64,000 nucleotides of DNA, taken from positions 45,260,001 through 45,324,000 of the forward strand of contig NC_043012.1 of NCBI RefSeq assembly GCF_006345805.1. Reading direction: 5' to 3'. Under the pieces are notes generated by a model that was given only the letters and a program-made list of their open reading frames with translations, ran no database searches and was not told where the DNA came from. Below, piece after piece: positions 1,295-64,000 of this stretch; positions within the stretch are counted from its first letter, which is position 1, and the number at the start of each line of letters is the position of its first letter. The translations under genes were made by a program, and so were the position numbers. This DNA comes from Octopus sinensis. Its lineage: Eukaryota.

Positions 1295-1884
1295 GCCGTA
1301 GGGTCACAAAAATAAAATTCAAGAATAGGCCCCTGAAACTGAAGCACAATGGCTGGTGTCAGCCACCAGCTACAATTTTGAAGACGTTACTAACATCTTG
1401 GAAATTGCCATCCTAGATCACCAGAACTGGATATGCCAGTCTTTCGAAATCTTGATTGAAGATAGAATAGAAAATATAGGAGATTTGATAAAACTACCAG
1501 GCGGCACCAACTTACATATCGCCGTTGAAGGCAGAAAACCACGCTGTCACCTCTGTGGCAGCAAAAACCACGTAAAAGTTGGTTGTGGTTGTCCAATATA
1601 CAAGGAGCAACAGCAACAAAAGCAACAACAAAAAAACCAAAAACCAAAGAAAGAACCAGCCCTACTACCCACACCGCCATATGCACAGCTGATAAAATAG
1701 CTCTACCAAGAAATGAAAGATCATCAGCAACCAACTAGCCAGCCCAAGCAAACGACAACTCTATCAGCGCCACCAAGAACAGAAACAGTACAATCACCAC
1801 CACCACCACCACCACCACAAATAACGCCGCCACCACCACCGCCGCCACCACCACCGCCACCACCATACCACCACCACCACCACC

Positions 1885-1916
<32 letters not shown>

Positions 1917-2175
1917 CAAAAAAACCAAAAACCAAAGAAAGAACCAGCCCTACTACCCACACCGCCATATGCACAGCTGATAAAATAGCTCTACCAAGAA
2001 ATGAAAGATCATCAGCAACCAACTAGCCAGCCCAAGCAAACGACAACTCTATCAGCGCCACCAAGAACAGAAACAGTACAATCACCACCACCACCACCAC
2101 CACCACAAATAACGCCGCCACCACCACCGCCGCCACCACCACCGCCACCACCATACCACCACCACCACCACCACC

Positions 2176-2207
<32 letters not shown>

Positions 2208-4686: not shown

Positions 4687-5470
4687 CAGGGGTCGAACAG
4701 TTACATTATTTTTCGGCATAGTCTTCTTACTTATTCCATCGGAGAAAAAGGTTTTCGCCTGGTCGCATAGCTATTTATGTACCGTTTCATGCTCTTCATT
4801 CGTCGCAAATCGACAATCTGGTAAAGGATGCCGAAAGGTTATCTGATAGTCGAAGCGAGGAGTGGACTGTATGTAGAGTGTCCTGGCAATCCGAAACCCA
4901 GATTTTCAATAACATCAATGATGTGGGCGACCGTGTGTGGGTGTGCATTATCATGCAACAATAATACTTAATCTCATACTTTGGTGAGAATATCTAGTTT
5001 CTGTTTCTTGGCTATCTTTTCACTGTAGCCTAAACTGGTCGCTGTAAAGCCTCTTTTCAGGTAACGTTCCAATATAGTTTCTTTTTTGCATCTAATATAA
5101 CGGTTAGCATTACTTTTCCTGCGGAAGATTGTGTCTTGAGTTTCTTTTTCGCTGGCGATTCCGGGTGTTTTAATTCTATATTCTACTTTTCGGATTTTAG
5201 CTCAAAGTTTTGAGCCGAGATCTCATCTCGTTTGATTCTTTTCTTCAGAAACTTCGCCTTCATCGTTTAAGCGGTTGAGTAAGCGTTGACATGCGCTTAA
5301 TCACTTCAGCAAGCTCTCATGACACCCATCTCGCACGCACTTTACAGAATCGATAATTGTCGGGGTTGATTTTGTATGTAGAACCATGACTAATTTGCAG
5401 AGAATATACCACCTCATCAATGGTTTCTCTCTTGAGCTTGCTGAATCTTCTTCATCAATTTGTACAACAT
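4687..5470 (-). mobile_element. Decayed mariner transposon, 3' part (interrupted by a LINE)
   Basis: Minus-strand remnants ETIDEVVYSLQISHGS, KVRARWV, KLKTQSSAGKVMLTV, LLHDNAHPH; degenerate TIR-like gcaggggtcgaac at about 4686. Confidence 0.75.
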
Positions 5471-7869
5471 CTTCCCGGTTCGGCCAGGCCCTTCTTGACG
5501 TGGCTGAAGATTGTTTTCTATCGCAACATGTTGAATATCCGACAAGGCATCGGTCTGGGCAGCAGCCATCTATGCTAGATCTGGTATTCTCCCGCTATCC
5601 AAGATCAGTGTCAGACGTATCTGTGTGCGCCCCTCTTGCCAAGAGTGATCATGCGGTCCTGAAGTTCGTCATGCACACAACTTTTTCTACGCCCACGACT
5701 ACTTCGCTGCCACGTAGAGTCTTCTCTGCAATTAATCTTGAAATTCTAACCGAGGCTTCCGCGCTTCTGGACTGGCGATCCCTGATGACGTTGTCCTCAG
5801 TTGACGAACTATGGTCATCCCTCAAAGCATATGTAATCTGTTTGACTGACCAGGCAGTTCCCGTTGGGCTTCCCAAGAAGAAGAAACACAAGCCCTGGGT
5901 GACGAAGAAGGTTAAACGAGAACGTCGACTCAGAGATATTGCTTGGGCTGAATTCAAAAATCTGGATTCGACTGCAGCTTTTGAGGTGTACAAAACTCAA
6001 CGAGACCGAGCCGTGAAAATTGAAAAGAAAGAACGCTTCAGTTATGAATACAAAACCGCGGCAAATGCCAGTAGCAATCCAAAAACCTTCTTTGCCCATG
6101 TCCAGCGGAATTCCCGCTTGAACAACCAGATTGCAACGTTGGTAGACTCAACAGGCGTATCGATTGAGGACCCTTATCAACAGAGTCAATTATTTGCCGA
6201 GGCTTTTTCAACTATTTTCAAACAAGATGATGGTCGTGAACCCCCTCCATTTGATAGATCGGTACCTCCAATGCTTCGATTGGTCATCACGCAGGACGAA
6301 GTCAAACGTGTTATTCAAGGCCTCGATGTCAACAAGGGTCACGGCCCTGACGGCATACACCCACGGGTTATCAAAGCGTTGGCTCCGGTCATCTGCGAGC
6401 CCTTAACACGACTATTCAATATGTCATTGGCGACGGGTGTTATACCTGCAGACTGGAGAACAGTGATAATCTGCCCAATTTTCAAGAAAGGGAGCCGCGA
6501 AGACCCGCTTAACTACCGACCGGTTTCCCTTACATCAATAATCAGCAAGATGTTCGAAACCATCCTTAAGAAAAGTATGATGCTTCACCTCCTAAACACA
6601 GCCTCTATCTCTGATTCCCAACACGGCTTCGTGCCGAAGAGATCATGCTTGACCAACTTACTAGTAATGGAAGAATTGGTGACGCGCATCCTCGATGATA
6701 GTGATGCTGTTGACATCGTTTTATTGGACTTTGCCAAAGCTTTTGACTCGGTAAACCACCGCCTATTACTTGTCAAGCTTCAAGCATATAGTTTCCATCC
6801 GGATATTATACGATGGGTTGGTGCCTTCCTCTCAGATCGCTCCTTCCAAGTCCAAGTTAATGGTTCGCGGTCCGACGTCTCCAGTGCGAGCAGTGGCGTG
6901 CCTCAAGGTTCAGTGCTTGGGCCCTTGTTGTTCTTAGTCTTCATAAATGACTTGCCCGACGACCTCACGCAACACACCCTTCTATTTGCCGACGATATCA
7001 ACTGGTCGCTCCTCGCGGTAATATAGAGGATCTTCGTCGATGCCTCCACCAAATTTGGAAGTGGTCTAACGATTGGGACCTGTGTCTGAACGTGTCAAAG
7101 TGCTGTCATCTGCCTGTCGGCCCTACTCCTGCAACTCAACTTGATTTCGAGCCGGGTCGTCTGCTGCTGGAGAGGACCGATCAGGTAAAGGACCTGGGTA
7201 TCTTGGTGGATTCCTCCTTTTCGCCTTCGGCCCAGTGCGTCCATGCTGCCAACAAAGCACGCGAAATTCTGTTCTTGATTCGACGGTCATTCGGAATGCT
7301 CACAGCAGCCATATTCCTACCACTCTATGTCACGCTGGTGAGACCCATATTGGAGTATGGGATTCAAGCCTCTTCTCCTTATCTCCTCAAAGACATACAG
7401 CATCTCGAAAGAGTCCAGAAGCTGGCTACCCGCATGGTTCATGGTCTCAAAAATTTGTCCTACGAAGAAAGGCTGAGGACGCTCGACCTTTATTCTCTTG
7501 AAAAACGCCGCCGCCGTGGTGATCTCATTCTCGCCCACAACATCATAAGCGGAAAGTGTAACCTCTCGAAAGAGCTGTTCTTTACTCCTGCTCCAGAGAG
7601 TCGGCTGCGGGGTCATTCCGAAAAGCTCTACCTGCGACGATTTCATCTCAATCGAAGGAGAGAGGCTTTCTCCGTCCGGGTTGTGGATCCGTGGAATAAG
7701 CTGCCGGACGAGATAGTGAAGATGCCGACGACCGCTTTGTTCAAAGCCTCCCTGGACCTCAAGTGGCCTGAACTCTTTACATGAACACCACCTTGTACTT
7801 AACTCCATGTCCCCCTACATGGCCTTGCTATTTGCTTTTGAGCCAAATTAACTAACTAACTAACTAACT
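5471..7869 (+). mobile_element. 5'-truncated CR1-type LINE ORF2 (endonuclease C-terminus and reverse transcriptase), one frameshift near 7010, (ACTA)n tail
   Basis: LDLVF..SDH, YRPVSLTS, QHGF, DFAKAFDSVNH, GVPQGSVLGPLLF, FADD, RPILEY, RRRRGDLI; tail aactaactaac at 7849-7872; AACAT at 5466-5470 and 7870-7874 (TSD). Confidence 0.92.
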
Positions 7870-23609: not shown

Positions 23610-26600
23610 AAGTTGGTTTGTTGATGAGTACCTCAAAGAAATCCGGAGTGGAGCCCCGAAGGCGGTCTAGTGTTCGACTCGACACTCTTCCGGCAGCTCC
23701 CGCAACCAAGCTGGTGCCAAACGTAATGCACTGCACTCCTTTGGACTACATCAGCAAGGTCGAGAGAGAAAACCTGATGATTGGGCTACCCAGGACTTTC
23801 TTATCTCTAGCCCAGGCCAGTGCAAAACTGGAGAGGACACTTCAGTGCTGCTGTAAAAAGCTACAGAAACAACACGGGAGGTAACAGTCACGAGTGATAA
23901 GTCCATTCAGATTGGCGTAAAATATGGGCGCTACGGGTTACCTCTGACGGTGGGAGGGACCTCCGTGTCCTATTGGTTAGCTACTGCCCACCTCAAGCTG
24001 GGCAGCCCCCAGTTAATAAGGTGCTGACCCGCCACAGGCCGCCTGCTTCATTGGGTGCTTGGAGCTAAGAGTATGACTTGAAAAACGGCCTGCAACCTCT
24101 GCACCAGGCAAACAACTAAAAGTGAAGAAAACACCAGTCCTGCGGTTGGCAAGCTGGAATGTCAGGACCATGTGCCCTGGAATATCTGATGATCTACTCA
24201 GGGTTGAAGACACAAGGAAAACAGCCATCATTGACCGTGAACTAAAGAGGCTCAACATAGACATTGCTGGGCTACAGGAGACAAGACTTCCCTCAAACCG
24301 CAAACTCAAAGAGCAGGATTTCACCTTCTTTTGGCAGGGAAGAGATCCAGAAGAACCTCGTCAACATGGCGTTGGCTTTGCAGTGAGAAACTCACTACTC
24401 TCCTCAATAGAACCACCATCATGAGGCACTGAGCGAATCCTCTCACTGCGCCTCTCGACTGCTTCTGACTCAGTACATCTACTCAGCATCTATGCTCCCA
24501 CTCTCTACAGCTCAGAGGAGACCAAGGACCAGTTCTACAAAGATCTCAACTGTGTCATAGAAATATACCAACGACTGAAAATATCTACCTTCTAGGGGAT
24601 TTTAACGCTCGCGTGGGATCTGACCATGATTCGTGGCCCATTTGTGTTGGACACTTTGGTATTGGCAACATGAATGACAATGGTCAGAGACTATTCGAAT
24701 TCTGCACATACCACAACCTGTGCATCACAAACACATTCTTTACCAACAAGCCATCCCACAAGGGATCTTGGAGACATCCAAAATCTCACCACTGGCATCA
24801 GCTGGATCTCATCATTACACGGAGATCCTTTCTGAATTCTACTCTATTGACCCGCGGTTACCACAGCGCGGATTGTGACACAGACCACTCACTAATTAGA
24901 AGTAGGGTGAGGATTCTACCTAAAAAGGTCCATCGCTCCAAGAAAGTGGGCCGACCACGCATCAACACTGCCAGAACCTCGGACCCTACACTGCGAAAAT
25001 GTTTTGCTGCTTCTATCAAGGTTGCCCTCAGTGGCTGCCCAACCTCCTCTGCTGAAAGTAGGTGGAACTATATCAGGGAAGCTTTGTATACGACATCAAT
25101 AGATACTTTCAGCATGAGAGAAAGGCAAAACCCAGATTGGTTCAATGCTGGGCTCTCAGAGCTGGAGCCAGTTAACGAAGCAAAGCGTGCAGCTCTGATG
25201 CAATACAAGACTGGCTCTTCTACAAAGTCACTCGAAGAACTCAGAAAGGCACGAAATAAAACCCAACTGACAGCCAGACGCTGTGCAAATAGGTATTGGC
25301 AGGAAATCTGTCAGAGCATCCAGTCAGATGCTGACAGTGGCGACACCCGTGGGATGTATGCCGGTTTGAAGAAGGCTCTCGGACCATCCGCAACCAAATC
25401 AGCCCTTCTGAAATCAACTACTGGAGATCTCATCAGGGATCAAAGCAAGCAAATGGATAGATGGGTGGAGCACTACCAGGATCTCTACTCACGGGAGACT
25501 ACAGTGGCTGAGGCTGCAGTCGAGAGTGTCAAGATCTTGCCAGTCATGTGCGAACTTGACAGTCCGCCATCTATAGCAGAGTTCATCAAGGCTGTTGACT
25601 CCCTAGCAAGAAACAAAGCTCCGGGAAAAGACGGCATCCCCCTCAGAGATCATCAAAGCCGGCAAAAACACCATCCTGCTTCGGCACCTTCATGAGCTTC
25701 TGTGTCAGTGCTGGGAAGAGGGTACAGTCCCTCAGGATATGCGGGATGCTAACATCATTACGCTTTACAAAAACAAAGGTGACCGTGGTGATTGTAACAA
25801 TTACCGTGGAATACCTCTTCTAAGCACTGTTGGAAAGACCTTTACCCGCGTTATCCTGGCTAGGCTACAACTACTTGCTTCTCGAATCTATCCGGAATCG
25901 CAGTGTGGCTTTAGAAGAAGCAGATCAACTATCGATATGATATTCTCCATACGCCAACTTCAGTAGAAGTCCAGAGAGCAGAGAATGCCATTATATATGG
26001 CCTTCATTGATCTAACAAAGGCCTTTGACTCGGTAAGCAGAACAGGCTTCTTCACCCTGCTCCAAAAAATCGGATGTCCACCAAAGCTGCTGAGGATCAT
26101 CAAGTCTTTCCATGATGACATGCAAGGCACCATACAGCACAACGGTTCAACATCAGCCGCCTTCCAAATAAAAAACGGGGTAAAGCAAGGTTGTGTCCTC
26201 GCTCCTACATTGTTTGGCATCTTCTTCTCGCTCTTACTCTCACATGCCTTTCAGACATCAGATGATGGAGTGTTTCTGCACAGTAGAAGTGACGGGAAAC
26301 TGTTCAATCTCTCGCGCCTGCGTGCCAAGACCAAAATCAGAAACGTCCTAATCATTTGCTGATGATGCCGCTCTGGTATCACACACAGAAGAAGCCCTCC
26401 AAAGGCTCATTAACTGTTTTGAGCAAGCATGTAACGACTTTGGCTTAGCTATCAGCCTTAAGAAGACCAACATCATGGGTCAGGCTACATCGGACATCCC
26501 AAACATACATATTGGAGACCACAGATTACAAGAGGTGGAGAAGTTTACCTATCTGGTCTCTACCGTCACCTACAATCTATCCCTCGACGCTGAGCTCAAT

Positions 26601-27370
26601 ATACGCATTGGCAAGGCAGCTGCTGCGATGGCCCAACTCTCCAAACGGGCTTGGAACAACAATAAGCGGACCAAGACCACGAAAATGAAGATCTACCAGG
26701 CATGTGTACTTAGCACTCTACTGTATGGAAGTGAGACTTGGACGCTATACACACGCCAAGAGCGTCGCCTAAACATCTTTCACCTGCGCTGCCTCCGGAA
26801 AATCCTCCGCATCAAATGGCAGAACCATATCCCCAACAAAGATGTCCTCAGGCAAGCAGGAATACCAAGCATGTTTGCACTCCTCACACAAAGACGTATG
26901 AGATGGCTTGGGCATGTTAGCCGTATGAAAGATGGCAGAATCCCCAAGGACATACTTTACGGAGAGCTTGCTAGGGGTACTAGGTCTGTGGGTAGACCGC
27001 TCTTACGTTACAAAGATGTTTGCAAAAGGGACATGAAGGCCTGCAACATCAATATTAGTGGTTGGGAGGCAGTTGCCGGCAACCGTGGAGACTGGCGACG
27101 CACCGTAAGAGAGGGAATACAAAGGGGTGACAGAGAGAGAGAGGAGAAATGGAAAGACAAGAAAAGACGTCAACAAGAAACTATGGCATTACAACCAGCC
27201 AGGAACAGTCTTCGCTACATTTGCGGTACCTGCCAGAGGGAGTGTTTGTCCAGGATATGACTACACAGCCACAGCAGGAAATGTATCAGGACATGAAATG
27301 TAAAAGCCGGACTAGACTACTTTATGCGCAACTCCATTGTCTCCCGAGACAAAAAGGATGCCAACCAACC
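23610..27370 (+). mobile_element. Near full-length RTE-clade LINE (AP endonuclease and RT), inactivated by several stops and frameshifts
   Basis: LASWNVRTM, IAGLQETR, GDFNARVG, QLDLIITRR, DCDTDH, NYRGIPLLS, QCGFRRSRSTIDMIF, FIDLTKAFDSV, GVKQGCVLAPTLF, FADD, RWLGHVSRM..GRIPKDILYGEL, C-terminal YICGTCQRECLSRI; 3' end ccattgtctcccgagac...gatgccaaccaacc. Confidence 0.93.
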
Positions 27371-36069: not shown

Positions 36070-36976
36070 TATGTTTGACTTTTGCTTTATATTTGTACAA
36101 GTTGGCTCCAAGTCTCACCCAGAGACCTCAAGAGACAACAGGGTTGGAAGTTCATGTTGTTGTTATGCCTAGTGTGCCATATATTTGGGGGGTGGGGATG
36201 TTGTACTAATGAATGTCTAAAAAAAAAAAAAGGTTTTTTTTTTTGTTTTTTTTTTTAAACCGAAAATTATGGTTGTTTTAAACCTTGAGGTTACATAGAG
36301 AGTATTTTGCGTAGGATATGAGCAGTTCCCATGAGCACTATCTTTTGAACTTCTGCCATTTTTGGGTTTCCTGGTATCTGAGTTAGGTAGCTATCAGCCC
36401 CTTTTGCTATCATTCCCAGGGCACCTATGACAACAGGTATTGTTTTAGTCTTCAGCTTCCACATTTTGCTGATTTCTATTTCAAGATCTTTATATTTGCT
36501 CAGTTTTTGGTAGGTCCTGACAGATACGTTTATATCGATTGGGACAGTCATATCAATGAGGAGGCATGTTCTTTGTTTGAAGTCTTTCAATATGATGTCT
36601 GGCCTATTTGCATCTATCTTCCTGTCAGTTTGAATGGTGAAGTTCCAGAGGAGTGAGATGTGGTCATTTTCAAGCACTGGGGGTGGTTTGTGTTCCCACC
36701 AGTTTTTTTCATGGGGCAAATCCAGGTTTTTACAGATTACCCAGTGAATATATTGTGCAGCTCTATCGTGCCTGTTGAGATACTCTGTAGGCGCTAGAAG
36801 ACTGCACTTGGAGACCACATGGTCAATGGTTTCATTTTGTTGCTTGCATACACGACACGTTGGACTGCTTCTGATCTTTAATATGTTGGCCTGGTAGTTT
36901 CTTGTTGGTAGGCATTGATCTTGAGCTGCTATGATAAACCCCTCTGTTTCAGATTTTAAGCCAGAGGCCATTAGCC

Positions 36977-37193: not shown

Positions 37194-38098
37194 TATGTTT
37201 GACTTTTGCTTTATATTTGTACAAGTTGGCTCCAAGTCTCACCCAGAGACCTCAAGAGACAACAGGGTTGGAAGTTCATGTTGTTGTTATGCCTAGTGTG
37301 CCATATATTTGGGGGGTGGGGATGTTGTACTAATGAATGTCTAAAAAAAAAAAAAAGTTTTTTTTTTTTTTTTTTTTTTAAACCGAAAATTATGGTTGTT
37401 TTAAACCTTGAGGTTACATAGAGAGTATTTTGCGTAGGATATGAGCAGTTCCCATGAGCACTATCTTTTGAACTTCTGCCATTTTTGGGTTTCCTGGTAT
37501 CTGAGTTAGGTAGCTATCAGCCCCTTTTGCTATCATTCCCAGGGCACCTATGACAACAGGTATTGTTTTAGTCTTCAGCTTCCACATTTTGCTGATTTCT
37601 ATTTCAAGATCTTTATATTTGCTCAGTTTTTGGTAGGTCCTGACAGATACGTTTATATCGATTGGGACAGTCATATCAATGAGGAGGCATGTTCTTTGTT
37701 TGAAGTCTTTCAATATGATGTCTGGCCTATTTGCATCTATCTTCCTGTCAGTTTGAATGGTGAAGTTCCAGAGGAGTGAGATGTGGTCATTTTCAAGCAC
37801 TGGGGGTGGTTTGTGTTCCCACCAGTTTTTTTCATGGGGCAAATCCAGGTTTTTACAGATTACCCAGTGAATATATTGTGCAGCTCTATCGTGCCTGTTG
37901 AGATACTCTGTAGGCGCTAGAAGACTGCACTTGGAGACCACATGGTCAATGGTTTCATTTTGTTGCTTGCATACACGACACGTTGGACTGCTTCTGATCT
38001 TTAATATGTTGGCCTGGTAGTTTCTTGTTGGTAGGCATTGATCTTGAGCTGCTATGATAAACCCCTCTGTTTCAGATTTTAAGCCAGAGGCCATTAGC

Positions 38099-44762: not shown

Positions 44763-44949
44763 GTAGTTGATGGGCAAGACGAGGTGCTGAAGAAAGGACA
44801 ATAATTCTTGAAAGATGCATGTACATCCATTGCATATTTTTTTTCCTATTGTGTATCGCATTGTTTACATAGACGAATTTGTTCACAAAACGTAAATGAT
44901 GGCTCTGAATTCAAGAGAAAATCTGTAGAGATACCTTAAATAAATAAAG

Positions 44950-45344: not shown

Positions 45345-45515
45345 CAACAATCAAGGAACGGCCATAATCAAGGAACGGCCATAATAGGCCATTCACCCAA
45401 TTGTTGATGTTGATGTTGAACTTAAAAATGGTCTTTGACTATTTAATTTTTTCCCACTAGGCCGCTGGTGGCAAAAAAATTCTACAAAATTTTTTTTTTT
45501 GCCACCCTATATTGA

Positions 45516-45522
<7 letters not shown>
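45345..45522 (-). mobile_element. Dispersed, partly inverted fragment of the 484-bp hammerhead repeat family, in (TA)n
   Basis: About 45409-45522 is the reverse complement of about 63152-63258; 45348-45398 matches about 63260-63293 directly. Confidence 0.88.
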
Positions 45523-48859: not shown

Positions 48860-49060
48860 TTACTTGTTTCAGTCATTTGACTGTGGCCTTGCTGGAGCAC
48901 CGCCTTTAATCGAGCAACTCGACCGCGGTACTTATTCTTTGTAAGCCCTGTACTTATTCTATCGGTTCTTTTGCCGAACCGCTAAGTTACTGGGACGTAA
49001 ACACACCAGCATCGATTGTCAAGCAATGCTAGGGGGACAAACACGACACACAAACACACA
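48860..49060 (-). mobile_element. SINE family A 3' half (split by the Penelope insertion)
   Basis: Tail in reverse orientation ends in the internal (CA)n at 49060; the matching 5' half resumes at 53650-53814. Confidence 0.85.
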
Positions 49061-52000
49061 CTCGGTTTGTCCTTACACAGAGGCCATCCGGATTCCCGTT
49101 TGCGCCGTGAACAGGAATTAATCTTCTCTCTTCGCTCTTATACGCCATTTGGTCTCAACTCTCCCCCCCTCCTCATCTAATCCCCCTCTCCCCCCTCCTC
49201 ACCTATCCTTTCCCCCCGACCCCTACTTCTTCAGTCCTTCATCCTTTCACCCCTACTCCCCTTCCCTTCTTCCCTCTTTCTCCCTCCCTCTTCCCTTCCC
49301 TCTGCTCCTCTCCCCTTCTCTCTCCCCCTCTCCCACTTTCCTCCTTCATCCCCCTCCTCCCCCTCCTCTCCTCTTCCCCCCTCTCCTCCCCCTTTCTTCC
49401 CTCCCCTTCTCACCCCCCTCTTCTCCCCCTCCCCTCTTCTCCTCACTACACCACATGACTTTACACATCACATCACATATGATGTGCCATACTAATACAC
49501 ACACCAACTGATACATACTAATACGTACTAATACATACTAGTACATACTAATACATACACCAACCCTATACATACACACGTCCAGACCCCGCATACGCAC
49601 TTATACTCTCTCACCACACACACACAACACACTTATACATACCAATACGTACTAATACATACTAATACATACTAATACATACACGAACCCCATACATACG
49701 CACGTCCAGACCAATCCTACGCACTAATACTCTCTCATACACACACACACACACCAACACCTTATACATACTAATACATACACCAACCCTATACATACAC
49801 ACATCCAGACCCCTCCTACGCACTTTTAGCTGGTCCCTCAACCCTTTATCAACCCTATTATCTCCCCTTATTCGCTCTCGCGTCTCATGTTGATCTTTGA
49901 CCTCTGGCCGAAATCAGATCGCCATGTTGATTCGTTAGCTACTGCACGCATTTTTTTCTCTCCTATTTTTTCTGTGTTTTTCTCTCTCTGTGTATCTTTC
50001 TGTTGAAGAGCGTAGGCTCGAAACGTTAAAGACTTGTTTTATTTATTTTTTGAGCGCCATACTAATACAATTGTTCGTTTGTTTTCCACCTGCCTTCGTC
50101 TTTGTTTATTTTCATAAAAGCTCCCGTTATATATTATGCGCTCACGTGGTCTCACTTTCATCCTATATTCTACCAATACCACTATCAACACTTACCTCTA
50201 CCTTGGATTTTCTTTACCTCTGGATACTTACCATTGGCTGCACCTCTCTTTCGCGGATCAAAGTGACTTTGCATTGATGTGAAATCCTTAAAAAATATAC
50301 CACGACGTCTACACATTTCTCACCTTGAACTTTCAACCTTGAACTTGTTCGCATAAACTGTCCCGTTTGTTGTATTTTATTTTCTCTTATATTACCACTT
50401 TTTTTACATTCATTTCATGCTTTCCACATTTTCCTGAATTTTTGTTCTCCTTTCCGTCTTTCTTCCCTCTCTGGATGTCCATACTCCGTTTCCTCTGCCT
50501 GCACCCCCCTTTTTTTTGCCTCCCCCTCTCTCTGCTTCCTTCTTTCTTTCCCTTTTCCGTTTGCCCCGTCTTTTCTGCCCCTATCGCTTACTTATCTAGT
50601 TTTTCATACGATTATTATTTTTTTGTTTTTTTGAACGTTTGTTTTTTCCCTTTTTTTCGCTATCCTTTTTTTCTATTTTTTTCATACGATAATTTTTGTT
50701 TTTTGTTTTTTTTGTCTTTTCGAACGTTTTTCTTCCGCTATCCCATCATGCCGGATCCTAGGTCCTACCTCCTCACCCTCCATCACCGTTTGAAGGATCA
50801 TCTCCGTCGCTTCCTGTATATTGCCTTCAGCCGTCCGTTAATCTCTCTCTACTTCTTTTTAAAAAAACCCGCTTCTCTAGCCATGTCTCTTTCCTAAGCC
50901 GCTGCCTACATCACCGACTCATCCCTAAAGGTTTCCGCCTCCACTTCCACCCTGTTCTCCACTCGGATTCTTCCATCTTACCCATACTCCGCACCACATC
51001 TTACCGCCTTATGCGGGCCACCATTCGCTCCAATCTCTCCAAACTACATGCCATTCAACCGCCTTCTTCTCCTGCTTTTCCACCTTCTTCTCCTCTCTGC
51101 CGCCTCTCTTGCTCCAAACACGCTACGCTTCATTATCCATTTGAATCAACTCTTCCATCAATTTCTTTCTGATACCAAACTTCGTAACTCCAATCACTCT
51201 TCCATTCCACCCTACCCGACGCCACTACCCCAACGCCTCCACCACCCTTCTCCCTCCCGATAGGCTCCATCCACCCACACCTAACCCCACTGCCCCTCCC
51301 TACAACCCCTTCTCCCCTCCCGGTAGGCTCCATCCACCTACACCTAACCCTACTGCCCCGCCCAACCACCCCCCACCACACCTCCCCAATCCTCCCCCTC
51401 AGACCTCCACGAGACCTACCACCCCTCCTACTTCTATTCCACCCACCCCTTCTCCACTTCCGTCTGTTGTTACCATTCCCCCCGATCTTCCCCTCTCTGC
51501 GGCTGAACGCTCCGTCCTTGGTAGGGGTCTGCGTTTCATCCCCCTCACTCCATCCTGTAAGGAATTCCAGACGCGAGTTGATGTCCACAGCTTTGTGCGA
51601 CGTGTCCGGTTGGGTGCGCATTACCACGACTCGCCATCCACACCCAACGAAGAGGACTGCTTCACTGGCCTGGGCCGCCGACCATCCCCGTGGACGCCTG
51701 CCCCTGGCCAGATCCTAGCAGTGGATCTTTTTGCGGGCGCTTGTCAGCGTGCATTGGAGCGGTTCAACTTCTCCAGGCGCCAACGCCGCCTCAACATCTC
51801 CCCGGCTGAGCTCTTGGCTCTTCGTTCCCTCCAACGGCGCGCTGACATTATCATCAAACCGGCTGACAAGGGTGGAGCTGTAGTGGTGTGGGGCGCGGAC
51901 CTCTATAGGGCCGAGGCTTTCCGCCAACTCAATGACACCTCCTTCTATTCCCCTCTGCCCTCTAACCCCACACGTAGCTACCAACAGACGGTATCCTCTA

Positions 52001-53595
52001 CTGTCCAAGACCTCATCTCGTCCTCCCGTCTCCCCCGCACCGCATCCAACCTAATTGTGCGAACCCCACGTACCCCCACCATTTACTTCCTCCCCAAAAT
52101 CCACAAACCCAACAACCCTGGCCGCCCCATCGTCTCCTCCGCCTGTAACTGCCCCACGGAGCTCATCTCTAAATACCTCGACCGTGTCCTTGCCCCCCTA
52201 GTGGCATCTCTTCCCTCCCACATCCACGATACCAACCATGCTCTCCGGCTTTTCAACTCTTTCTCCTTTCCTCCCGGCTCCTCCAAAATCCTTTTTACTA
52301 TGGACATCCAAAGCCTCTATACTGTTATCCCTCACCACGAAGGACTGCAGGCCCTTCGACACTTTCTTGACCTCCGCTCTAACCCTGTACCTGACACCTC
52401 CACACTCATTCGTCTGGCCGAACTTGTCCTTACTCTGAACTGCTTCTCGTTCGCGGGCGAGTTCTACCATCAGATCTCGGGAGTGGCCATGGGAACGCGA
52501 ATGGGCCCCAACTATGCGAACCTGTTCGTTGGCTATGTTGAGGCCCAAATATTCTCTAATTTCACTGGTCCAACTCCTGAACTATATGGTCGTTACATTG
52601 ACGACATTATCGGTGCCACCCACTCTCCCGCGAACATCTAGATTCCTTCCTCTCTTTCGTCCATCTTTCCATCCAGCCCTCCACTCCACTTCCACTATCT
52701 CCAACACCTCTGTCTCCTTCCTCGACATTTCGGTTAGCATTCTCCACTCCACTCTTACCACCTCCATTCACTACAAACACACAGACTCACACTCATACCT
52801 CAACTTCTCTTCCTCCACCCAGAACACACCAAGCTTTCCATCCCCTATTCCCAATTCCTCCGTCTACGTAGGCTCTGTAGTGACGACCATGACTTTGAGA
52901 CTCAGTCTCAACGTATGGCTCACCACTTCACCCTACGTGGATACCCCCCTCACCACTATCCACACCGTCCTTGCCAGAGCACGGTCCGTGGACCGTGTAT
53001 CTGCTCTCTCTCCCCGAACCCGCCCTGTAGTCTCCCGCCTCCCTTTTCCCCTCACTTACCACCCCACCCACGACCCTACGTCTCCAACGCACCATTCTTC
53101 GAGCTTTCCGTCATCTCCAGTCCGACCCGTCCACTTCCAACCTCTTCCCTAACCGACCCCTCCCCCCTTTCAAACGAGCCCACAACCTTCGAGACCTTTT
53201 GGTCCATAGCTCCTTCCCTGACCCTACCTCCCAACCCGGCTCGTTCCCCTGCTCCCGCCCACGTTGCCGCACTTGCCCTTACCTCTCCAACACCACCCGC
53301 CTCACTAGCACCCACCATCGACCCTATCCCATCATCCACTCCTTCACCTGCACCTCCAGCAATATTATCTATTGCATCTCTTGCTCTCTCTGCAATTCCT
53401 TGTACATCGGACAAACGGGACGCCGCTTGGCTGACCGGTTCGCGGAACACCTTCGTGACATCCACGTTAACATCCACGTGACATCGAACGTTAAAGACTT
53501 GTTTTATTTATATTTCCTGAGCGCCATACTAATACAATTGTTCGTTTGTTTTCCCCTGCCTTCGTCTTTTGTTTATTTTCATAAAGCTTCCCGTT
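49061..53595 (+). mobile_element. Near full-length Penelope-like element (Neptune-type RT and GIY-YIG) with 5' pseudo-LTR; frameshifted
   Basis: ATG 50748 then HVSFLSRCLHHRLIPKGF; ADKGGAVVVW; IYFLPKIHK..PGRPIVS; TMDIQSLYT; GVAMGTRMGPNYANLF; RYIDD; CSRPRCRTC linker; NIIYCISCSLCNSLYIGQTGRRLADRFAEHL; 49061-49150 encodes the GIY-YIG end RLRREQELIFSLRSYTPFGLN; 50018-50128 is repeated at 53484-53595. Confidence 0.92.
49995..50032 (+). ncRNA. Minimal type I hammerhead-like motif in the Penelope pseudo-LTR (A6U core variant)
   Basis: Stem I tcttt/aaaga; CUGUUGA plus extra A; stem II gagc-gtag-gctc; GAA; palindromic ACGU; putative site GUU at 50025-50027. Confidence 0.65.
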
Positions 53596-53649: not shown

Positions 53650-53814
53650 ACGACGGGCTTCTTCCAGTTTCCGTCTACCAAATCCACTCACAAGGCTTTG
53701 GTCGGCCCTAGGCTATAGTAGAAGACGCTCGCCCAAGGTGCCACGCAGTGGGACTGAACCCGGAACTATGTGGTTGGTAAACAAGCTACTTACCACATAG
53801 CCACTCCTGCGCCT
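53650..53814 (-). mobile_element. SINE family A 5' half (partner of 48860-49060)
   Basis: gacgggcttcttccagtttccgtctacc...ccactcctgcgcct. Confidence 0.85.
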
Positions 53815-53829
53815 TTTATATATATACCT

Positions 53830-54032: not shown

Positions 54033-54078
54033 ATATATAAATATATATATATAAATATATATATATATAAATTTATAT

Positions 54079-54464
54079 GCAGGAGTGGCCGTGTGGTAAG
54101 TAGCTTGCTTACCAACCACATGGTTCCGGGTTCAGTCCCACTGCGTGGCACCTTGGGCAAGTGTCTTCTACTATAGCCTCGGGCCGACCAAAGCCTTGTG
54201 AGTGGATTTGGTAGACGGAAACTGAAAGAAGCCCGTCGTATATATGTATATATATATGTATGTGTCTGTGTTTGTCCCCCTAGGATTGCTTGACAACCGA
54301 TGCTGGTGTGTTTATGTCCCCGTCACTTAGCGGTTTGGCAAAAGAGACCGATAGAATAAGTACTGGGCTTACAAAGAATAAGTCCCGGGGTCGAGTTGCT
54401 CGACTAAAGGCGGTGCTCCAGCATGGCCGCAGTCAAATGACTGAAACAAGTAAAAGAGTAAAGA

Positions 54465-61891: not shown

Positions 61892-61941
<50 letters not shown>

Positions 61942-61943
<2 letters not shown>

Positions 61944-62095
61944 AGGCGCAATGGCCCAGGGTTAGGGCAGCGGACTCGCGGTCGTAGGATCGCAGTTTCC
62001 AGTCCCAGACCGGGCATTGTGAGTGTTTATTGAGCGAAAACACCTAAAAGCTCCACGAGGCTCCGGCAGGGGGTCGTGATCCCGGTTGTACTCTT
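61942..62095 (+). mobile_element. SINE family B 5' part
   Basis: Head matches 8471. Confidence 0.8.
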
Positions 62096-62418
62096 ATACA
62101 CATATATATGTGTGTAGGGTACCATTGGATTTCAAAAATCCGTCCATACTCTATCATCAGTCAACATAGTGTCTATGTTGACTTATGAAGATTTACAACA
62201 TACTTTCTCAGTGAAACTCAATATACCAAATGTACATTTTCGGATTTTTCATAAGTTCATAATGTGATGTAATTCTTTGGTATAGCCATTGCATGCGGCT
62301 GAAGAGAGCTTTAAACTATCTGTTATGTCGATTACACATTGATGTAAGAATAGGGTGTTTTATAAAGCTTGAAACACGTGTACCGCAACATCCTTCGTGT
62401 TCTGTTTTTTATTTCATT

Positions 62419-62470
<52 letters not shown>

Positions 62471-62896
62471 ATATATATATAACGGCGTACTTTGGTCTCT
62501 TATATGTAAGTATACATTTTTCAAAATCTTGTACGACTCAATTTCAGTCGATCAGCCATTTCACGCTCATTCGTTCATTCCACTCTTCGTTCATTTATTC
62601 TCCCTCTCTCACATTTCTTTGCCTTCTCTTCTCTCTTCTTGCTAACTTTCCCTCCACTTTTTACTGTACTGTGTCCCTGTCATTTTTTCTCTCCCTTCCT
62701 TAATTCTTCTTCCCTCTGCCACTACCTGTCTCACTTCTCTTCCCACGTGACCGGCGTGGTCTTTCTTTCTTGGTCTGGCTGTTGTCCGTGCAACATCGAT
62801 ATTCCTCGATTTAACTCATATATATATATATATATATATAATTCCTAATTAATCAATATAGGGTGGCAAAAAATTTCGTAGAATTTACCCTGTAAT

Positions 62897-62999
62897 TTCT
62901 TATACGATGCACCGTTTCATCTATTGTTTAATGGTAAACTAACCCGATTAAATTAAATCAAGCCAATCTTCCATAGGCCGATAGATTCGTCAGTAAGAA
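62897..62999 (-). ncRNA. Canonical type I hammerhead ribozyme, copy 1
   Basis: UUCUUA CUGACGA AUCUAU-[56 nt]-AUAGAU GAA ACGGUGCAUCGU A UAAGAA; predicted cleavage 3' of GUA, between 62903 and 62902. Confidence 0.9.
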
Positions 63000-63380
63000 C
63001 AGCCAGATCGGAACAGATATTTTCACGAGGCACTTCTATCCCTGCCTCGGCAATATCTGACCTAAAATTTTCAAATCATCGCACTCGCGCCAAATTTATC
63101 GGCAGCAAATATAAGCCGCCGATTCCATTAGGGAATTAACCAGAAAATTCCTAATTAATCAATATAGGGTGGCAAAAAATTTCGTAGAATTTTTTTGCCA
63201 CCAGCGGCCTAGTGGGAAAAAATTAAATAGTCATAGACCATTTATAAGTTCAACATCACAATCAAGGAACGGCCATAATAGGCCATTCACCCACTGGAAA
63301 TAACAGCCAAAGCTTCAACCGCAAAAACAACATCAATTCCGCAAACCAGGAGAAAATTAAAAAAACATTTACCCTGTAAT

Positions 63381-63483
63381 TTCTTATACGATGCACCGTT
63401 TCATCTATTGTTTAATGGTAAACTAACCTGATTAAATTAAATCAAGCCAATCTTCCATAGGCCGATAGATTCGTCAGTAAGAA
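63381..63483 (-). ncRNA. Canonical type I hammerhead ribozyme, copy 2
   Basis: Same fold with all core nucleotides canonical; predicted cleavage between 63387 and 63386. Confidence 0.9.
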
Positions 63484-63938
63484 CAGCCAGATCGGAACAG
63501 ATATTTTCACGAGGCACTTCTATCCCTGCCTCGGCAATATCTGACCTAAAATTTTCAAATCATCGCACTCGCGCCAAATTTATCGGCAGCAAATATAAGC
63601 CGCCGATTCCATTACGGAATTAACCAGAAAATTCCTAATTAATCAATATAGGGTGGCAAAAAATTTCGTAGAATTTTTTTGCCACCAGCGGCCTAGTGGG
63701 AAAAAATTAAATAGTCATAGACCATTTATAAGTTCAACATCACAATCAAAGAACGGCCATAATAGGCCATTCACCCACTAGAAATAACAGCCAAAGCTTC
63801 AACCGCAAAAACAACATCAATTCCGCAAACCAGGAGAAAATTAAAAAAACATTTACCCTGTAATTTCTTATACGATGCACCGTTTCATCTATTGTTTAAT
63901 GGTAAACTAACCTGATTAAATTAAATCAAGCCAATCTT

Positions 63939-63985
<47 letters not shown>

Positions 63986-64000
63986 AGTAAAGAGTAAACC

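What the first reader, a model, noticed from the sequence alone, without database searches (positions are those of the whole stretch)
62841..63943. Retrozyme-like array: 484-bp tandem unit carrying a canonical self-cleaving hammerhead, predicted to release a 484-nt circular RNA
Seen in sequence: the unit repeats with an exact 484-bp period between two (TA)n tracts. Its minus strand reads stem I UUCUUA, core CUGACGA, stem II AUCUAU...AUAGAU, GAA, stem III ACGGUGCAUCGU, site GUA, stem I' UAAGAA. Complete ribozymes lie at 63381-63483 and 62897-62999, and a half copy starts at 63865 and is cut by the array end. Units differ at only a handful of positions and there is no ORF. Established knowledge: tandem type I hammerhead repeats (non-LTR retrozymes) occur in several animals, self-process to monomers that accumulate as circRNAs, and are proposed to be mobilised by Penelope-like RTs. 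Inference: a minus-strand transcript cut at 63387/63386 and 62903/62902 gives an intact 484-nt monomer. I do not know of a description of this family in cephalopods but cannot search for one.
Basis: partly seen in the sequence, partly recalled or inferred. Interest (0 to 1): 0.95.

Follow-up and report, generated by a model that had tools for sequence, protein, structure and literature searches.

The report
Hammerhead-ribozyme tandem repeat (animal retrozyme)
A 484-bp non-coding tandem repeat carries an intact hammerhead self-cleaving RNA motif and looks like a new member of the known animal "retrozyme" mobile elements, so it is real and well formed but not a new kind of thing.

Summary
A 484-bp unit repeats 2.2 times (99% identity, no indels) between two (TA)n tracts. 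Its minus strand carries two complete type I hammerhead motifs and one half motif at the stated coordinates. Such a motif is expected about 0.001 times or less per simulated 64-kb window.

The element fits the published class of metazoan non-LTR retrozymes. It is non-coding, 38% GC and strongly self-paired on the ribozyme strand only. Helix III is short and self-complementary, and two copies are predicted to form a double hammerhead. A Penelope-like element (PLE) lies in the same window.

- A second, 5'-inverted copy of the family also sits in (TA)n. It ends within 6 nt of the same internal unit position, just past a 12-bp hairpin. This fits the AT-rich cutting and internal start of reverse transcription shown in vitro for a PLE.
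- A second hammerhead, unrelated in sequence but with the same architecture, lies 500 bp away.
- Both hammerheads have a 47-55-nt insert in helix II and lack the usual G10.1-C11.1 pair. Rfam models miss them even at E≤10.

Cleavage, transcription, circles and the host species (the cephalopod claim) could not be tested. Verdict: new member of a known kind, moderate interest.

The parts
62841..63943 (-). Whole insertion. It consists of a 46-nt 3' 'tail' piece, two full 484-bp units and a 93-bp partial unit. The RNA sense strand is the minus strand.
   Evidence: TRF period 484, 2.2 copies, 99%. Self-BLAST and unit comparison.
63381..63483 (-). Complete type I hammerhead, copy 2. Helix I is UUCUUA/UAAGAA, followed by CUGACGA. 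Helix II is AUCUAU/AUAGAU, extended by an imperfect hairpin. Then come GAA, helix III ACGGUGCAUCGU and A17. The predicted cut is 63387|63386.
   Evidence: Motif scan. The constrained fold is -25.7 kcal/mol against an MFE of -28.2. The dimer MFE is a double hammerhead.
62897..62999 (-). Complete type I hammerhead, copy 1. The predicted cut is 62903|62902. It differs from copy 2 by one A-to-G change, which turns a U-A pair of the helix II extension into U-G.
63865..63943 (-). Half hammerhead (helix II 3' part, GAA, helix III, A17, helix I 3' strand), cut off by the 5' end of the insertion. It cannot cleave on its own.
62903..63386 (-). The 484-nt monomer between the two predicted cleavage sites. 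GC is 38%. The circular MFE is -145.5 kcal/mol (z = -5.65), against -112.1 for the antisense strand.
63168..63202 (-). Perfect 12-bp hairpin GGUGGCAAAAAA...UUUUUUGCCACC, also present at 63652-63686. Both independent insertions of the family end 8-22 nt downstream of it.
62841..62886 (-). 3' terminal 'tail'. It matches unit positions 63147-63192 and is joined to the array across a roughly 176-nt deletion or template jump at an ATTT microhomology. It ends ...GAUUAAUUAGGAAUU against (AT)n.
62818..62840 (.). (AT)n target tract at the sense-3' side of the insertion.
63941..63981 (.). (AT)n target tract at the sense-5' side of the insertion.
45345..45520 (+). Second, truncated copy of the same family, lying between (TA)n tracts. 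The sense part is 45404-45520 (about 92% identical to the unit). An inverted 5' piece is at 45345-45399. It ends ...GAUUAAUUA against (TA)n, 6 nt from the array's junction. It has no hammerhead.
62294..62387 (+). Second hammerhead (HHR-B), of unrelated sequence. It reads UGCGG-CUGAAGA-helix II 8 bp with a 47-nt insert-GAA-ACACGUGU-A-CCGCA. The predicted cut is 62382|62383. It is a single copy in an element of about 300 bp that ends at (TA)n 62424-62481.
51463..53486 (+). Decayed Penelope-like element, the candidate class of mobiliser. It has an RT, a CX4CxxC linker (CSRPRCRTC) and a GIY-YIG endonuclease. It is truncated at about residue 515 of 576.
   Evidence: Pfam RVT_1 and GIY-YIG, both just under Pfam's curated cut-offs. 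tblastn with homologues. Homologue list.

Best explanation
The array is one genomic insertion of a non-coding, non-autonomous retroelement of the metazoan 'non-LTR retrozyme' type. This is a hammerhead-bearing repeat that depends on a Penelope-like element (PLE) for its spread.

Proposed working:
(1) The minus strand is transcribed across at least two units.
(2) Helix III of each hammerhead is only 3-5 bp as a hairpin, but it is self-complementary over 12 nt. Two neighbouring ribozyme copies therefore pair into a double hammerhead, and each cuts 3' of A17 (63387|63386 and 62903|62902).
[quoted passage not shown] A host RtcB-type ligase can close it into a compact, highly paired circle.
(4) New copies arise when a PLE RT/GIY-YIG protein nicks AT-rich DNA, here (TA)n. 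It starts reverse transcription at an internal site of the RNA, about 227-241 nt downstream of the cleavage site and just past a 12-bp hairpin. It then copies more than one unit of a multimeric or circular template, which leaves a partial-tandem array.

Shown here: the motif, the repeat, the strand-specific structure, the dimer prediction, the shared junction, the (TA)n sites and a PLE in the same window. Inferred from the family: transcription, cleavage, ligation, and which RT does the copying.
For: - Repeat anatomy.
- Complete hammerhead core with helices of 6, 6(+) and 3-5 bp. Chance expectation is <=0.001 per window.
- Dimer prediction: the unconstrained dimer MFE is exactly the double hammerhead, with a 12-bp intermolecular helix III (-68.7 against 2 x -28.2 kcal/mol). 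The unrelated HHR-B behaves the same way (-55.5 against 2 x -24.2).
- Two sequences that share nothing but the core keep the same architecture.
- The sense-strand circle folds at -145.5 kcal/mol (z = -5.65), while the antisense strand is at the shuffle mean (-112.1).
- GC is 38% and no ORF exceeds 44 aa.
- A second insertion of the family is also in (TA)n and has a 5' inversion. Its 3' junction is 6 nt from that of the array. For two random positions in 484 nt, p is about 0.03.
- A PLE with a CX4CxxC linker plus GIY-YIG lies 9 kb away. An intact relative of that PLE carries a minimal hammerhead with the same CUGACGA box 93 nt after its ORF.
- Literature: class definition and circRNA life cycle (PMC7229834). 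Weak palindromic helix III and dimeric action of metazoan type I hammerheads (PMC4209133). (TA)n bias of some PLE clades and the proposed role of the linker (PMC8557442). PLE cutting of AT-rich DNA and internal initiation of reverse transcription next to a stem-loop (PMC11167929). Retrozymes as PLE derivatives (bioRxiv 10.64898/2026.07.22.740005).
Against: - No Rfam hammerhead model scores the region, even at E<=10.
- The 10.1-11.1 pair is A-U (G-U in HHR-B), not the strongly conserved G-C.
- No recognisable helix I/helix II loop contacts are present.
- The monomer hammerhead fold is 2.5 kcal/mol above the MFE.
- There is no evidence of transcription, cleavage or circles.
- No other copy carrying the ribozyme could be retrieved, so conservation and covariation within the family are untested.
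- The unit shares no sequence with the PLE in the window. That PLE copy is truncated and has no hammerhead.
- The shared-junction argument rests on only two insertions.
- In vitro, hammerhead cleavage was not needed for PLE insertion (PMC11167929). The circle may therefore be a by-product rather than the template.
Confidence: 0.8

Rival explanations
1. The family assignment is right, but this locus is an inert relic. The array is a dead insertion that is not transcribed, so no 484-nt circle comes from it. Any circles in the animal would come from other, larger arrays.
For: The array has only two complete ribozymes. No promoter can be identified with these tools. The array carries a terminal deletion and sits among decayed transposons. 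Units have already diverged at 4 sites.
Against: Both ribozymes are intact. The one change inside a ribozyme keeps the pairing (U-A to U-G). Units are 99% identical, so the insertion is young.
Confidence: 0.4
2. The element is mobilised by a LINE rather than by a Penelope-like element. On this view it is a SINE-like parasite of one of the CR1/L2-type elements in the window, and the hammerhead is only an RNA-processing device.
For: LINE RT ORFs lie in the window at 5386-7784 and 24613-27260. Fixed 3' ends and 5' inversion (twin priming) are also LINE hallmarks.
Against: The element has no poly(A) or LINE-like 3' tail and no sequence shared with those LINEs. The junction is internal to the repeat unit, the structure is partial-tandem and the targets are (TA)n. 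These match published PLE behaviour (PMC11167929, PMC8557442). Type I hammerheads with palindromic helix III are a PLE signature (PMC4209133).
Confidence: 0.12
3. The array is not an independent non-autonomous element. It is tandem pseudo-LTR debris of an autonomous PLE whose ORF was lost at this locus.
For: PLE hammerheads sit in pLTRs, and PLEs insert as partial tandems (PMC4209133, PMC11167929). Retrozymes and pLTRs are homologous in Xenopus (10.64898/2026.07.22.740005).
Against: The period is exactly 484 bp with no trace of RT/EN coding sequence in any frame. The second copy at 45.4 kb also lacks any ORF remnant. There is no similarity to the PLE in the window.
Confidence: 0.1
4. This is an ordinary satellite or local tandem duplication in which a hammerhead-like string arose by chance and does nothing.
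For: No Rfam hit. The 10.1-11.1 pair is non-consensus.
Against: The expected number of such motifs is <=0.001 per window. A second, unrelated hammerhead with the same architecture lies 500 bp away. RNA structure is strand-specific. The family is dispersed and has defined ends in (TA)n.
Confidence: 0.02

Closest known systems
Metazoan non-LTR retrozymes (Cervera & de la Pena 2020, PMC7229834), for example the Mytilus galloprovincialis 350-390-bp repeats
   Same: Type I hammerhead in a short, non-coding, low-GC tandem repeat. The RNA is highly self-paired. A PLE coexists in the same genome. In mussel, too, the ribozyme lacks the archetypal loop 1-loop 2 contacts.
   Different: The unit is 484 bp, above the 150-450 bp usually quoted. 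Helix II carries a 55-nt insert. The 10.1-11.1 pair is A-U. Expression and circles are not shown here. The host lineage is unidentified.
Minimal and atypical hammerheads of Penelope-like elements (Cervera & de la Pena 2014, PMC4209133)
   Same: Type I topology, a longer-than-usual helix II, a short helix I of 5-6 bp, a palindromic helix III and predicted action as a dimer.
   Different: It is not in a pLTR next to an RT/EN ORF. There is no bulged base between A9 and 10.1. There is no G10.1-C11.1 pair. Helix III is a real 3-5-bp hairpin rather than 0-2 bp.
Newt satellite 2 / axolotl retrozymes, and the Dolichopoda pDo500 satellite (about 500-bp unit; from my own knowledge, reference listed in PMC7761336)
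   Same: Tandem satellite-like repeats whose transcripts self-cleave to monomers. Weak helix III requires dimeric hammerheads. pDo500 shows that a unit of about 500 bp is not unprecedented.
   Different: Those form very large arrays, up to 10^5 copies. Here only a 2.2-unit array and one fragment are seen. There is no sequence similarity.
Green-anole Poseidon PLE (PAc) insertion mechanism (Frangieh et al. 2024, PMC11167929)
   Same: AT-rich target DNA. The 3' end of insertions is set by an internal start of reverse transcription beside a stem-loop downstream of the hammerhead. Products are partial tandems, and an optional short 'tail' is present.
   Different: That work concerns an autonomous element, with a start site 85-92 nt after the cut. 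Here the element is non-coding and the junction lies about 230-240 nt after the cut. The link is an analogy drawn from two insertions.
Plant LTR retrozymes (PMC4918200)
   Same: Non-autonomous hammerhead elements that give circular RNAs.
   Different: Plant elements have type III hammerheads inside LTRs, PBS/PPT, 4-bp target duplications, high GC and Gypsy-dependent mobilisation. None of these is present here.

Membership tests
Hammerhead ribozyme (structural definition) | Conserved core C3 U4 G5 A6 N7 G8 A9 / G12 A13 A14 / A15.1-U16.1 / H17 (not G) | tested here: met
   CUGACGA, GAA, A-U and A17 are present in both complete copies. HHR-B has CUGAAGA, GAA, A-U and A17.
Hammerhead ribozyme (structural definition) | Three helices around the core, with helix I open (type I) | tested here: met
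   Helix I is 6 bp and helix II is 6 bp plus an extension. Helix III is 3-5 bp as a hairpin, or 12 bp in the dimer.
Hammerhead ribozyme (structural definition) | G10.1-C11.1 closing pair of helix II (strongly conserved in natural ribozymes) | tested here: not met
   The pair is A10.1-U11.1 in HHR-A and G10.1-U11.1 in HHR-B. PMC4209133 lists G-C as highly conserved.
Hammerhead ribozyme (Rfam models, all hammerhead families of release 15) | Score at or above the gathering threshold | tested here: not met
   No hammerhead match at gathering score or at E<=10 on 62700-64000 and 61900-62500. The 47-55-nt helix II insert is the likely reason, but that was not tested.
Hammerhead ribozyme | Site-specific Mg2+-dependent self-cleavage | not testable with these tools
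   This needs in vitro transcription of monomeric and dimeric constructs.
Metazoan non-LTR retrozyme | Type I hammerhead inside a short head-to-tail repeat (about 150-450 bp), from dimers to multimers | tested here: met
   Period 484 bp, 2.2 copies. The unit is slightly longer than the quoted range (PMC7229834).
Metazoan non-LTR retrozyme | Non-coding, no LTR/PBS/PPT, GC below 45% | tested here: met
   ORFs are <=44 aa. Frames have no homologue. GC is 38%.
Metazoan non-LTR retrozyme | Monomer RNA predicted to be highly self-paired | tested here: met
   The circular MFE is -145.5 kcal/mol with 64% of bases paired and z = -5.65. The antisense strand is at -112.1. The linear fold has z = -4.9.
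Metazoan non-LTR retrozyme | Coexistence with autonomous PLEs in the genome | tested here: met
   A PLE RT+GIY-YIG lies at 51463-53486. The copy seen is decayed, so an active PLE is not shown.
Metazoan non-LTR retrozyme | Abundant linear and circular monomer RNAs in tissues | not testable with these tools
   No transcriptome of the host is reachable. Look-ups by exact and homologous frames found nothing.
PLE pLTR hammerhead (min-HHR) | Located in the pseudo-LTR of an RT/GIY-YIG element, with a bulged base after A9 and helix III of 0-2 bp | tested here: not met
   No ORF remnant adjoins the array. There is no bulge, and helix III is 3-5 bp. The relative in L002 does show the classic form.

The most novel reading that the evidence does not exclude
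This may be a lineage-specific retrozyme family (or two families) whose hammerheads carry a long helix II arm and a non-G-C 10.1-11.1 pair, and so escape standard covariance-model screens. Its insertions may record the copying mechanism directly. That record would be a (TA)n target, a fixed internal start of reverse transcription next to a hairpin, a partial-tandem product and a 5' inversion. If a genome-wide census confirmed this, it would be the first genomic footprint tying animal retrozymes to PLE-type internal-initiation TPRT. It would also give a defined RNA element (hairpin plus AU-rich site) to test with purified PLE protein.
Probability: 0.3. Interest if true: 0.6.

Novelty: new member of a known kind. 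Interest (0 to 1): 0.42.

Why it matters
Animal retrozymes are a recently recognised source of abundant ribozyme-made circular RNAs. Who mobilises them, and from which template, is still argued. This locus adds a well-preserved example from a genome that is not represented in the searched protein collection.

The locus has three useful features:
- Standard Rfam screening misses these ribozymes, so the class is probably under-counted.
- Two independent insertions share an internal 3' junction in (TA)n.
- Two unrelated hammerheads share the same unusual architecture side by side.

These features make the PLE-dependence hypothesis testable in this host. They do not change what is known about the class.

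Tried and rejected
- Rfam at gathering score over the whole window, and at E<=10 over the array, over HHR-B and over the PLE region, gave no hammerhead. The hits were only (TA)n-driven miRNA noise and a weak IRES_Picorna match (18 bits, gathering 33), which I regard as chance.
- I tried to reach other copies through spurious ORFs. Two exact look-ups and one homology search with the 62-aa frame found nothing.
- A pattern scan for CTGAYGA-N50-80-GAAACGGTGCATCGTA found one hit in metagenome contigs. It lies in a GC-rich, non-repetitive, bacterial-looking contig (L001) with no helices and is a chance match. The same scan of viral contigs found none.
- Host identification failed. An exact look-up of a young LINE ORF found nothing. 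The best PLE RT homologues are 58-66% identical and the best LINE RT homologue is 50% identical, from sharks, corals, a snail, a turtle and birds, so they are uninformative. A literature search for SINE strings found nothing, and ARAGORN found no tRNA.
- Homology between the 3' tail of the HHR-B element and the sequence after the truncated PLE (62392-62417 against 53559-53582) is 81% over 26 nt with E of about 3. I rejected it as insignificant.
- I found no hammerhead in the window's own PLE copy or after its upstream EN fragment. That region is CT-rich low-complexity sequence.
- The candidate minimal hammerhead at 44783-44827 is weak (helices of 4/5/1 bp) and does not give a clean double hammerhead. 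I left it unresolved.
Full report
**1. The observation**

Tandem Repeats Finder reports one array at 62883-63943 with period 484, 2.2 copies, 99% matches and no indels. Direct comparison gives 4 substitutions between units 1 and 2 and none between unit 2 and the 93-bp third unit. The array lies between an (AT)n tract at about 62818-62840 and one at 63941-63981.

Complete motifs are at 63483-63381 and 62999-62897, and a half motif is at 63943-63865. The predicted cuts (63387|63386 and 62903|62902) are 484 nt apart. No start-to-stop ORF exceeds 44 aa and no stop-free frame exceeds 62 aa.

I wrote a descriptor scan that requires CUGANGA, GAAA, U-H and three helices, with a helix II loop of up to about 120 nt.
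- On the real window it finds these two copies and one further strong hit (section 3).
- On 1000 first-order-Markov windows, a loose version hits 0.051 times per window.
- A version with helix I >=5 bp and helix II >=6 bp hits 0.001 times per window.
- The observed strength never occurs (also 0 in 100 shuffles).

First, the insertion starts at 62841 with a 46-nt piece equal to unit positions 63147-63192. This piece is joined to the rest across a deletion or template jump of about 176 nt at an ATTT microhomology. Second, no Rfam hammerhead model matches, at gathering score or at E<=10.

**2. The ribozyme**

All invariant core positions are present: C3-A9 with C7, G12-A14, A15.1-U16.1 and A17. 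Helix I is 6 bp and open, so the motif is type I.

Helix II opens with 6 bp and continues as a long imperfect hairpin, about 67 nt in all. The unconstrained fold also predicts this hairpin. The single substitution between ribozyme copies changes a U-A pair of that hairpin to U-G.

Three features depart from the textbook motif:
- The 10.1-11.1 pair is A-U rather than G-C.
- Helix II carries the 55-nt insert.
- There are no recognisable helix I-helix II loop contacts.

Helix III is weak as a hairpin (3-5 bp). With two G-U pairs, however, ACGGUGCAUCGU is self-complementary over all 12 nt. With ViennaRNA, the monomeric hammerhead fold (-25.7 kcal/mol) lies 2.5 kcal/mol above the MFE. The unconstrained MFE of two copies is exactly a double hammerhead, with a 12-bp intermolecular helix III and helices I formed in trans (-68.7 against 2 x -28.2 kcal/mol).

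This is the behaviour described for most metazoan type I hammerheads and for PLE hammerheads. In those, a short palindromic helix III gives poor monomer activity, and the active form is a dimer in tandem transcripts (PMC4209133, PMC7229834). Cleavage here is therefore predicted to need the tandem arrangement. That prediction is inference; no activity was measured.

**3. A second hammerhead, and a second copy of the family**

The scan found another strong motif on the plus strand at 62294-62387. It reads UGCGG / CUGAAGA / helix II of 8 bp with a 47-nt insert / GAA / ACACGUGU / A / CCGCA. It shares no sequence with the 484-bp unit but has the same architecture. Its dimer MFE is again a double hammerhead, with an 8-bp palindromic helix III. 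It is a single copy in an element of about 300 bp that ends at (TA)n 62424-62481. Two unrelated sequences that obey the same constraints in one neighbourhood argue for function of the motif in this genome.

Self-BLAST found a second copy of the 484-bp family at 45345-45520, again between two (TA)n tracts and in the opposite orientation. The sense part (45404-45520) is about 92% identical to the unit. An adjacent unit segment is present in inverted orientation at 45345-45399. This is a 5' inversion of the kind made by twin priming or template switching.

Its sense-3' end is ...GAUUAAUUA|(TA)n, and the array's is ...GAUUAAUUAGGAAUU|(AT)n. The two ends are 6 nt apart on the unit. Both lie 227-241 nt downstream of the cleavage site and 8-22 nt past a perfect 12-bp hairpin (63168-63202). 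For two random junctions on a 484-nt unit, the probability of falling this close is about 0.03. This is suggestive, but it rests on two cases.

**4. The RNA as a whole**

The monomer is 38% GC. As a circle, the sense strand folds at -145.5 kcal/mol with 64% of bases paired (z = -5.65 against dinucleotide shuffles). The antisense strand folds at -112.1, about the shuffle mean. The linear fold gives z = -4.9. Selection for structure therefore acts on the ribozyme strand, as expected if that RNA is the functional molecule.

**5. Surroundings**

The window is transposon-rich animal-type DNA. It holds CR1-like LINE RTs, a Mos1-type HTH and many microsatellites.

A Penelope-like element lies at 51463-53486 on the plus strand. 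It has an RT (RVT_1) followed by CSRPRCRTC (a CX4CxxC linker) and a GIY-YIG motif; both Pfam matches fall just below the curated cut-offs. It has frameshifts and is cut at about residue 515 of 576. A scrap of the EN C-terminus lies upstream at 49049-49159. It has about 1900 homologues in animals, the best at 58-66% identity.

An intact relative (L002) carries a classic minimal hammerhead with the same CUGACGA box 93 nt after its stop codon. The window's own copy has lost that part.

Published work:
- Craig et al. link the CX2-5CxxC linker (Neptune/Nematis, Naiad) with (TA)n insertion bias (PMC8557442).
- Frangieh et al. show in vitro that a PLE cuts AT-rich DNA and starts reverse transcription internally in its RNA beside a stem-loop downstream of the hammerhead. 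They also show that it produces partial tandems with an optional 'tail', and that it does not need hammerhead cleavage for insertion (PMC11167929).

The array's anatomy matches this picture point for point: a (TA)n target, an internal fixed junction next to a hairpin, a tail piece, more than 2 units in tandem, and an inverted 5' piece in the sister copy. The match is an analogy, not a demonstration. The unit shares no sequence with the PLE copy seen here.

**6. Comparison with what is known**

The element meets the testable defining features of metazoan non-LTR retrozymes (PMC7229834). These are a type I hammerhead in a short tandem repeat, no coding capacity, GC below 45%, highly paired RNA and coexistence with PLEs. 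The class was shown in a coral, a mussel and the axolotl, and was reported bioinformatically in many phyla. A 2026 preprint argues that retrozymes derive from PLE pLTRs (10.64898/2026.07.22.740005).

I found no paper describing such elements in cephalopods. I also could not establish that the window is cephalopod. It is not a PLE pLTR hammerhead in the strict sense, because it has no adjoining ORF, no bulged base after A9 and no G10.1-C11.1 pair. It also fails Rfam's score-based membership. I file it as a new member of a known kind, with a variant ribozyme (long helix II arm).

**7. Limits**

Transcription, cleavage, ligation and the identity of the mobilising RT are inferred. No further ribozyme-bearing copies could be fetched, so within-family covariation is untested. 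The one metagenome pattern hit is a chance match in a bacterial-looking contig.

**8. Verdict**

The interest is moderate. It is a clean, young example of a known class. It adds Rfam-invisible ribozymes, two architecturally matched hammerhead families side by side, and insertion junctions that make PLE-type mobilisation testable.

Noticed in passing
window 62294-62387 (+), element about 62117-62423: A second type I hammerhead (CUGAAGA core, 8-bp helix II with a 47-nt insert, palindromic helix III ACACGUGU). It is unrelated in sequence to the array, is a single copy, and ends at (TA)n 62424-62481. It is predicted to act as a dimer, but no partner copy is present in the window.
   Followed up: partly
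window 45345-45520: A truncated, 5'-inverted copy of the 484-bp family lies between two (TA)n tracts. It contains a 17-bp internal duplication (45349-45385). Its 3' junction is 6 nt from that of the array.
   Followed up: yes
window 51463-53486 (+) and 49049-49159 (+): A decayed Penelope-like element (RT, CX4CxxC linker, GIY-YIG) is cut inside the endonuclease. A scrap of an endonuclease C-terminus lies 2.3 kb upstream, which may be the remains of a partial-tandem (pLTR-type) insertion. No hammerhead is left in either.
   Followed up: partly
L002 7824-7857 (+): An intact relative of the window's PLE (ENA assembly ERZ25073780, 66% identical RT) has a classic minimal hammerhead 93 nt after its stop codon. 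It has a CUGACGA core, a bulged A, a 4-bp helix II and helix III ACGU.
   Followed up: partly
window 44783-44827 (+): A weak 45-nt minimal-hammerhead candidate has a CUGAAGA core, helices of 4/5/1 bp and an AUGCAU palindrome in loop 3. It lies 500 bp upstream of the 45.4-kb copy. It does not fold into a clean double hammerhead and could be chance.
   Followed up: partly
window 61943-62096; 53650-53815; 54070-54150: tRNA-like SINE sequences. One sits between (TG)n and the HHR-B element. Two are in inverted orientation after the PLE. ARAGORN calls none of them a tRNA gene.
   Followed up: no
window 36291-36971 and 37414-38094 (-): Two identical 226-aa ORFs (zf-RVT, the C-terminal end of a LINE RT) lie in a direct duplication of about 1.1 kb embedded in long (ATT)n tracts. 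This suggests a very recent duplication.
   Followed up: no
window 1614-2207: A 288-bp tandem repeat (2.1 copies, 99% identity) is rich in CAA/CAC triplets and overlaps ORFs of a degraded retroelement.
   Followed up: no
window 63149-63317 (-): A weak Rfam IRES_Picorna match (18.1 bits, gathering 33, E = 0.024 on a 1.3-kb search) covers the hairpin-rich middle of the unit. I regard it as a chance match to a structured AU-rich RNA.
   Followed up: no
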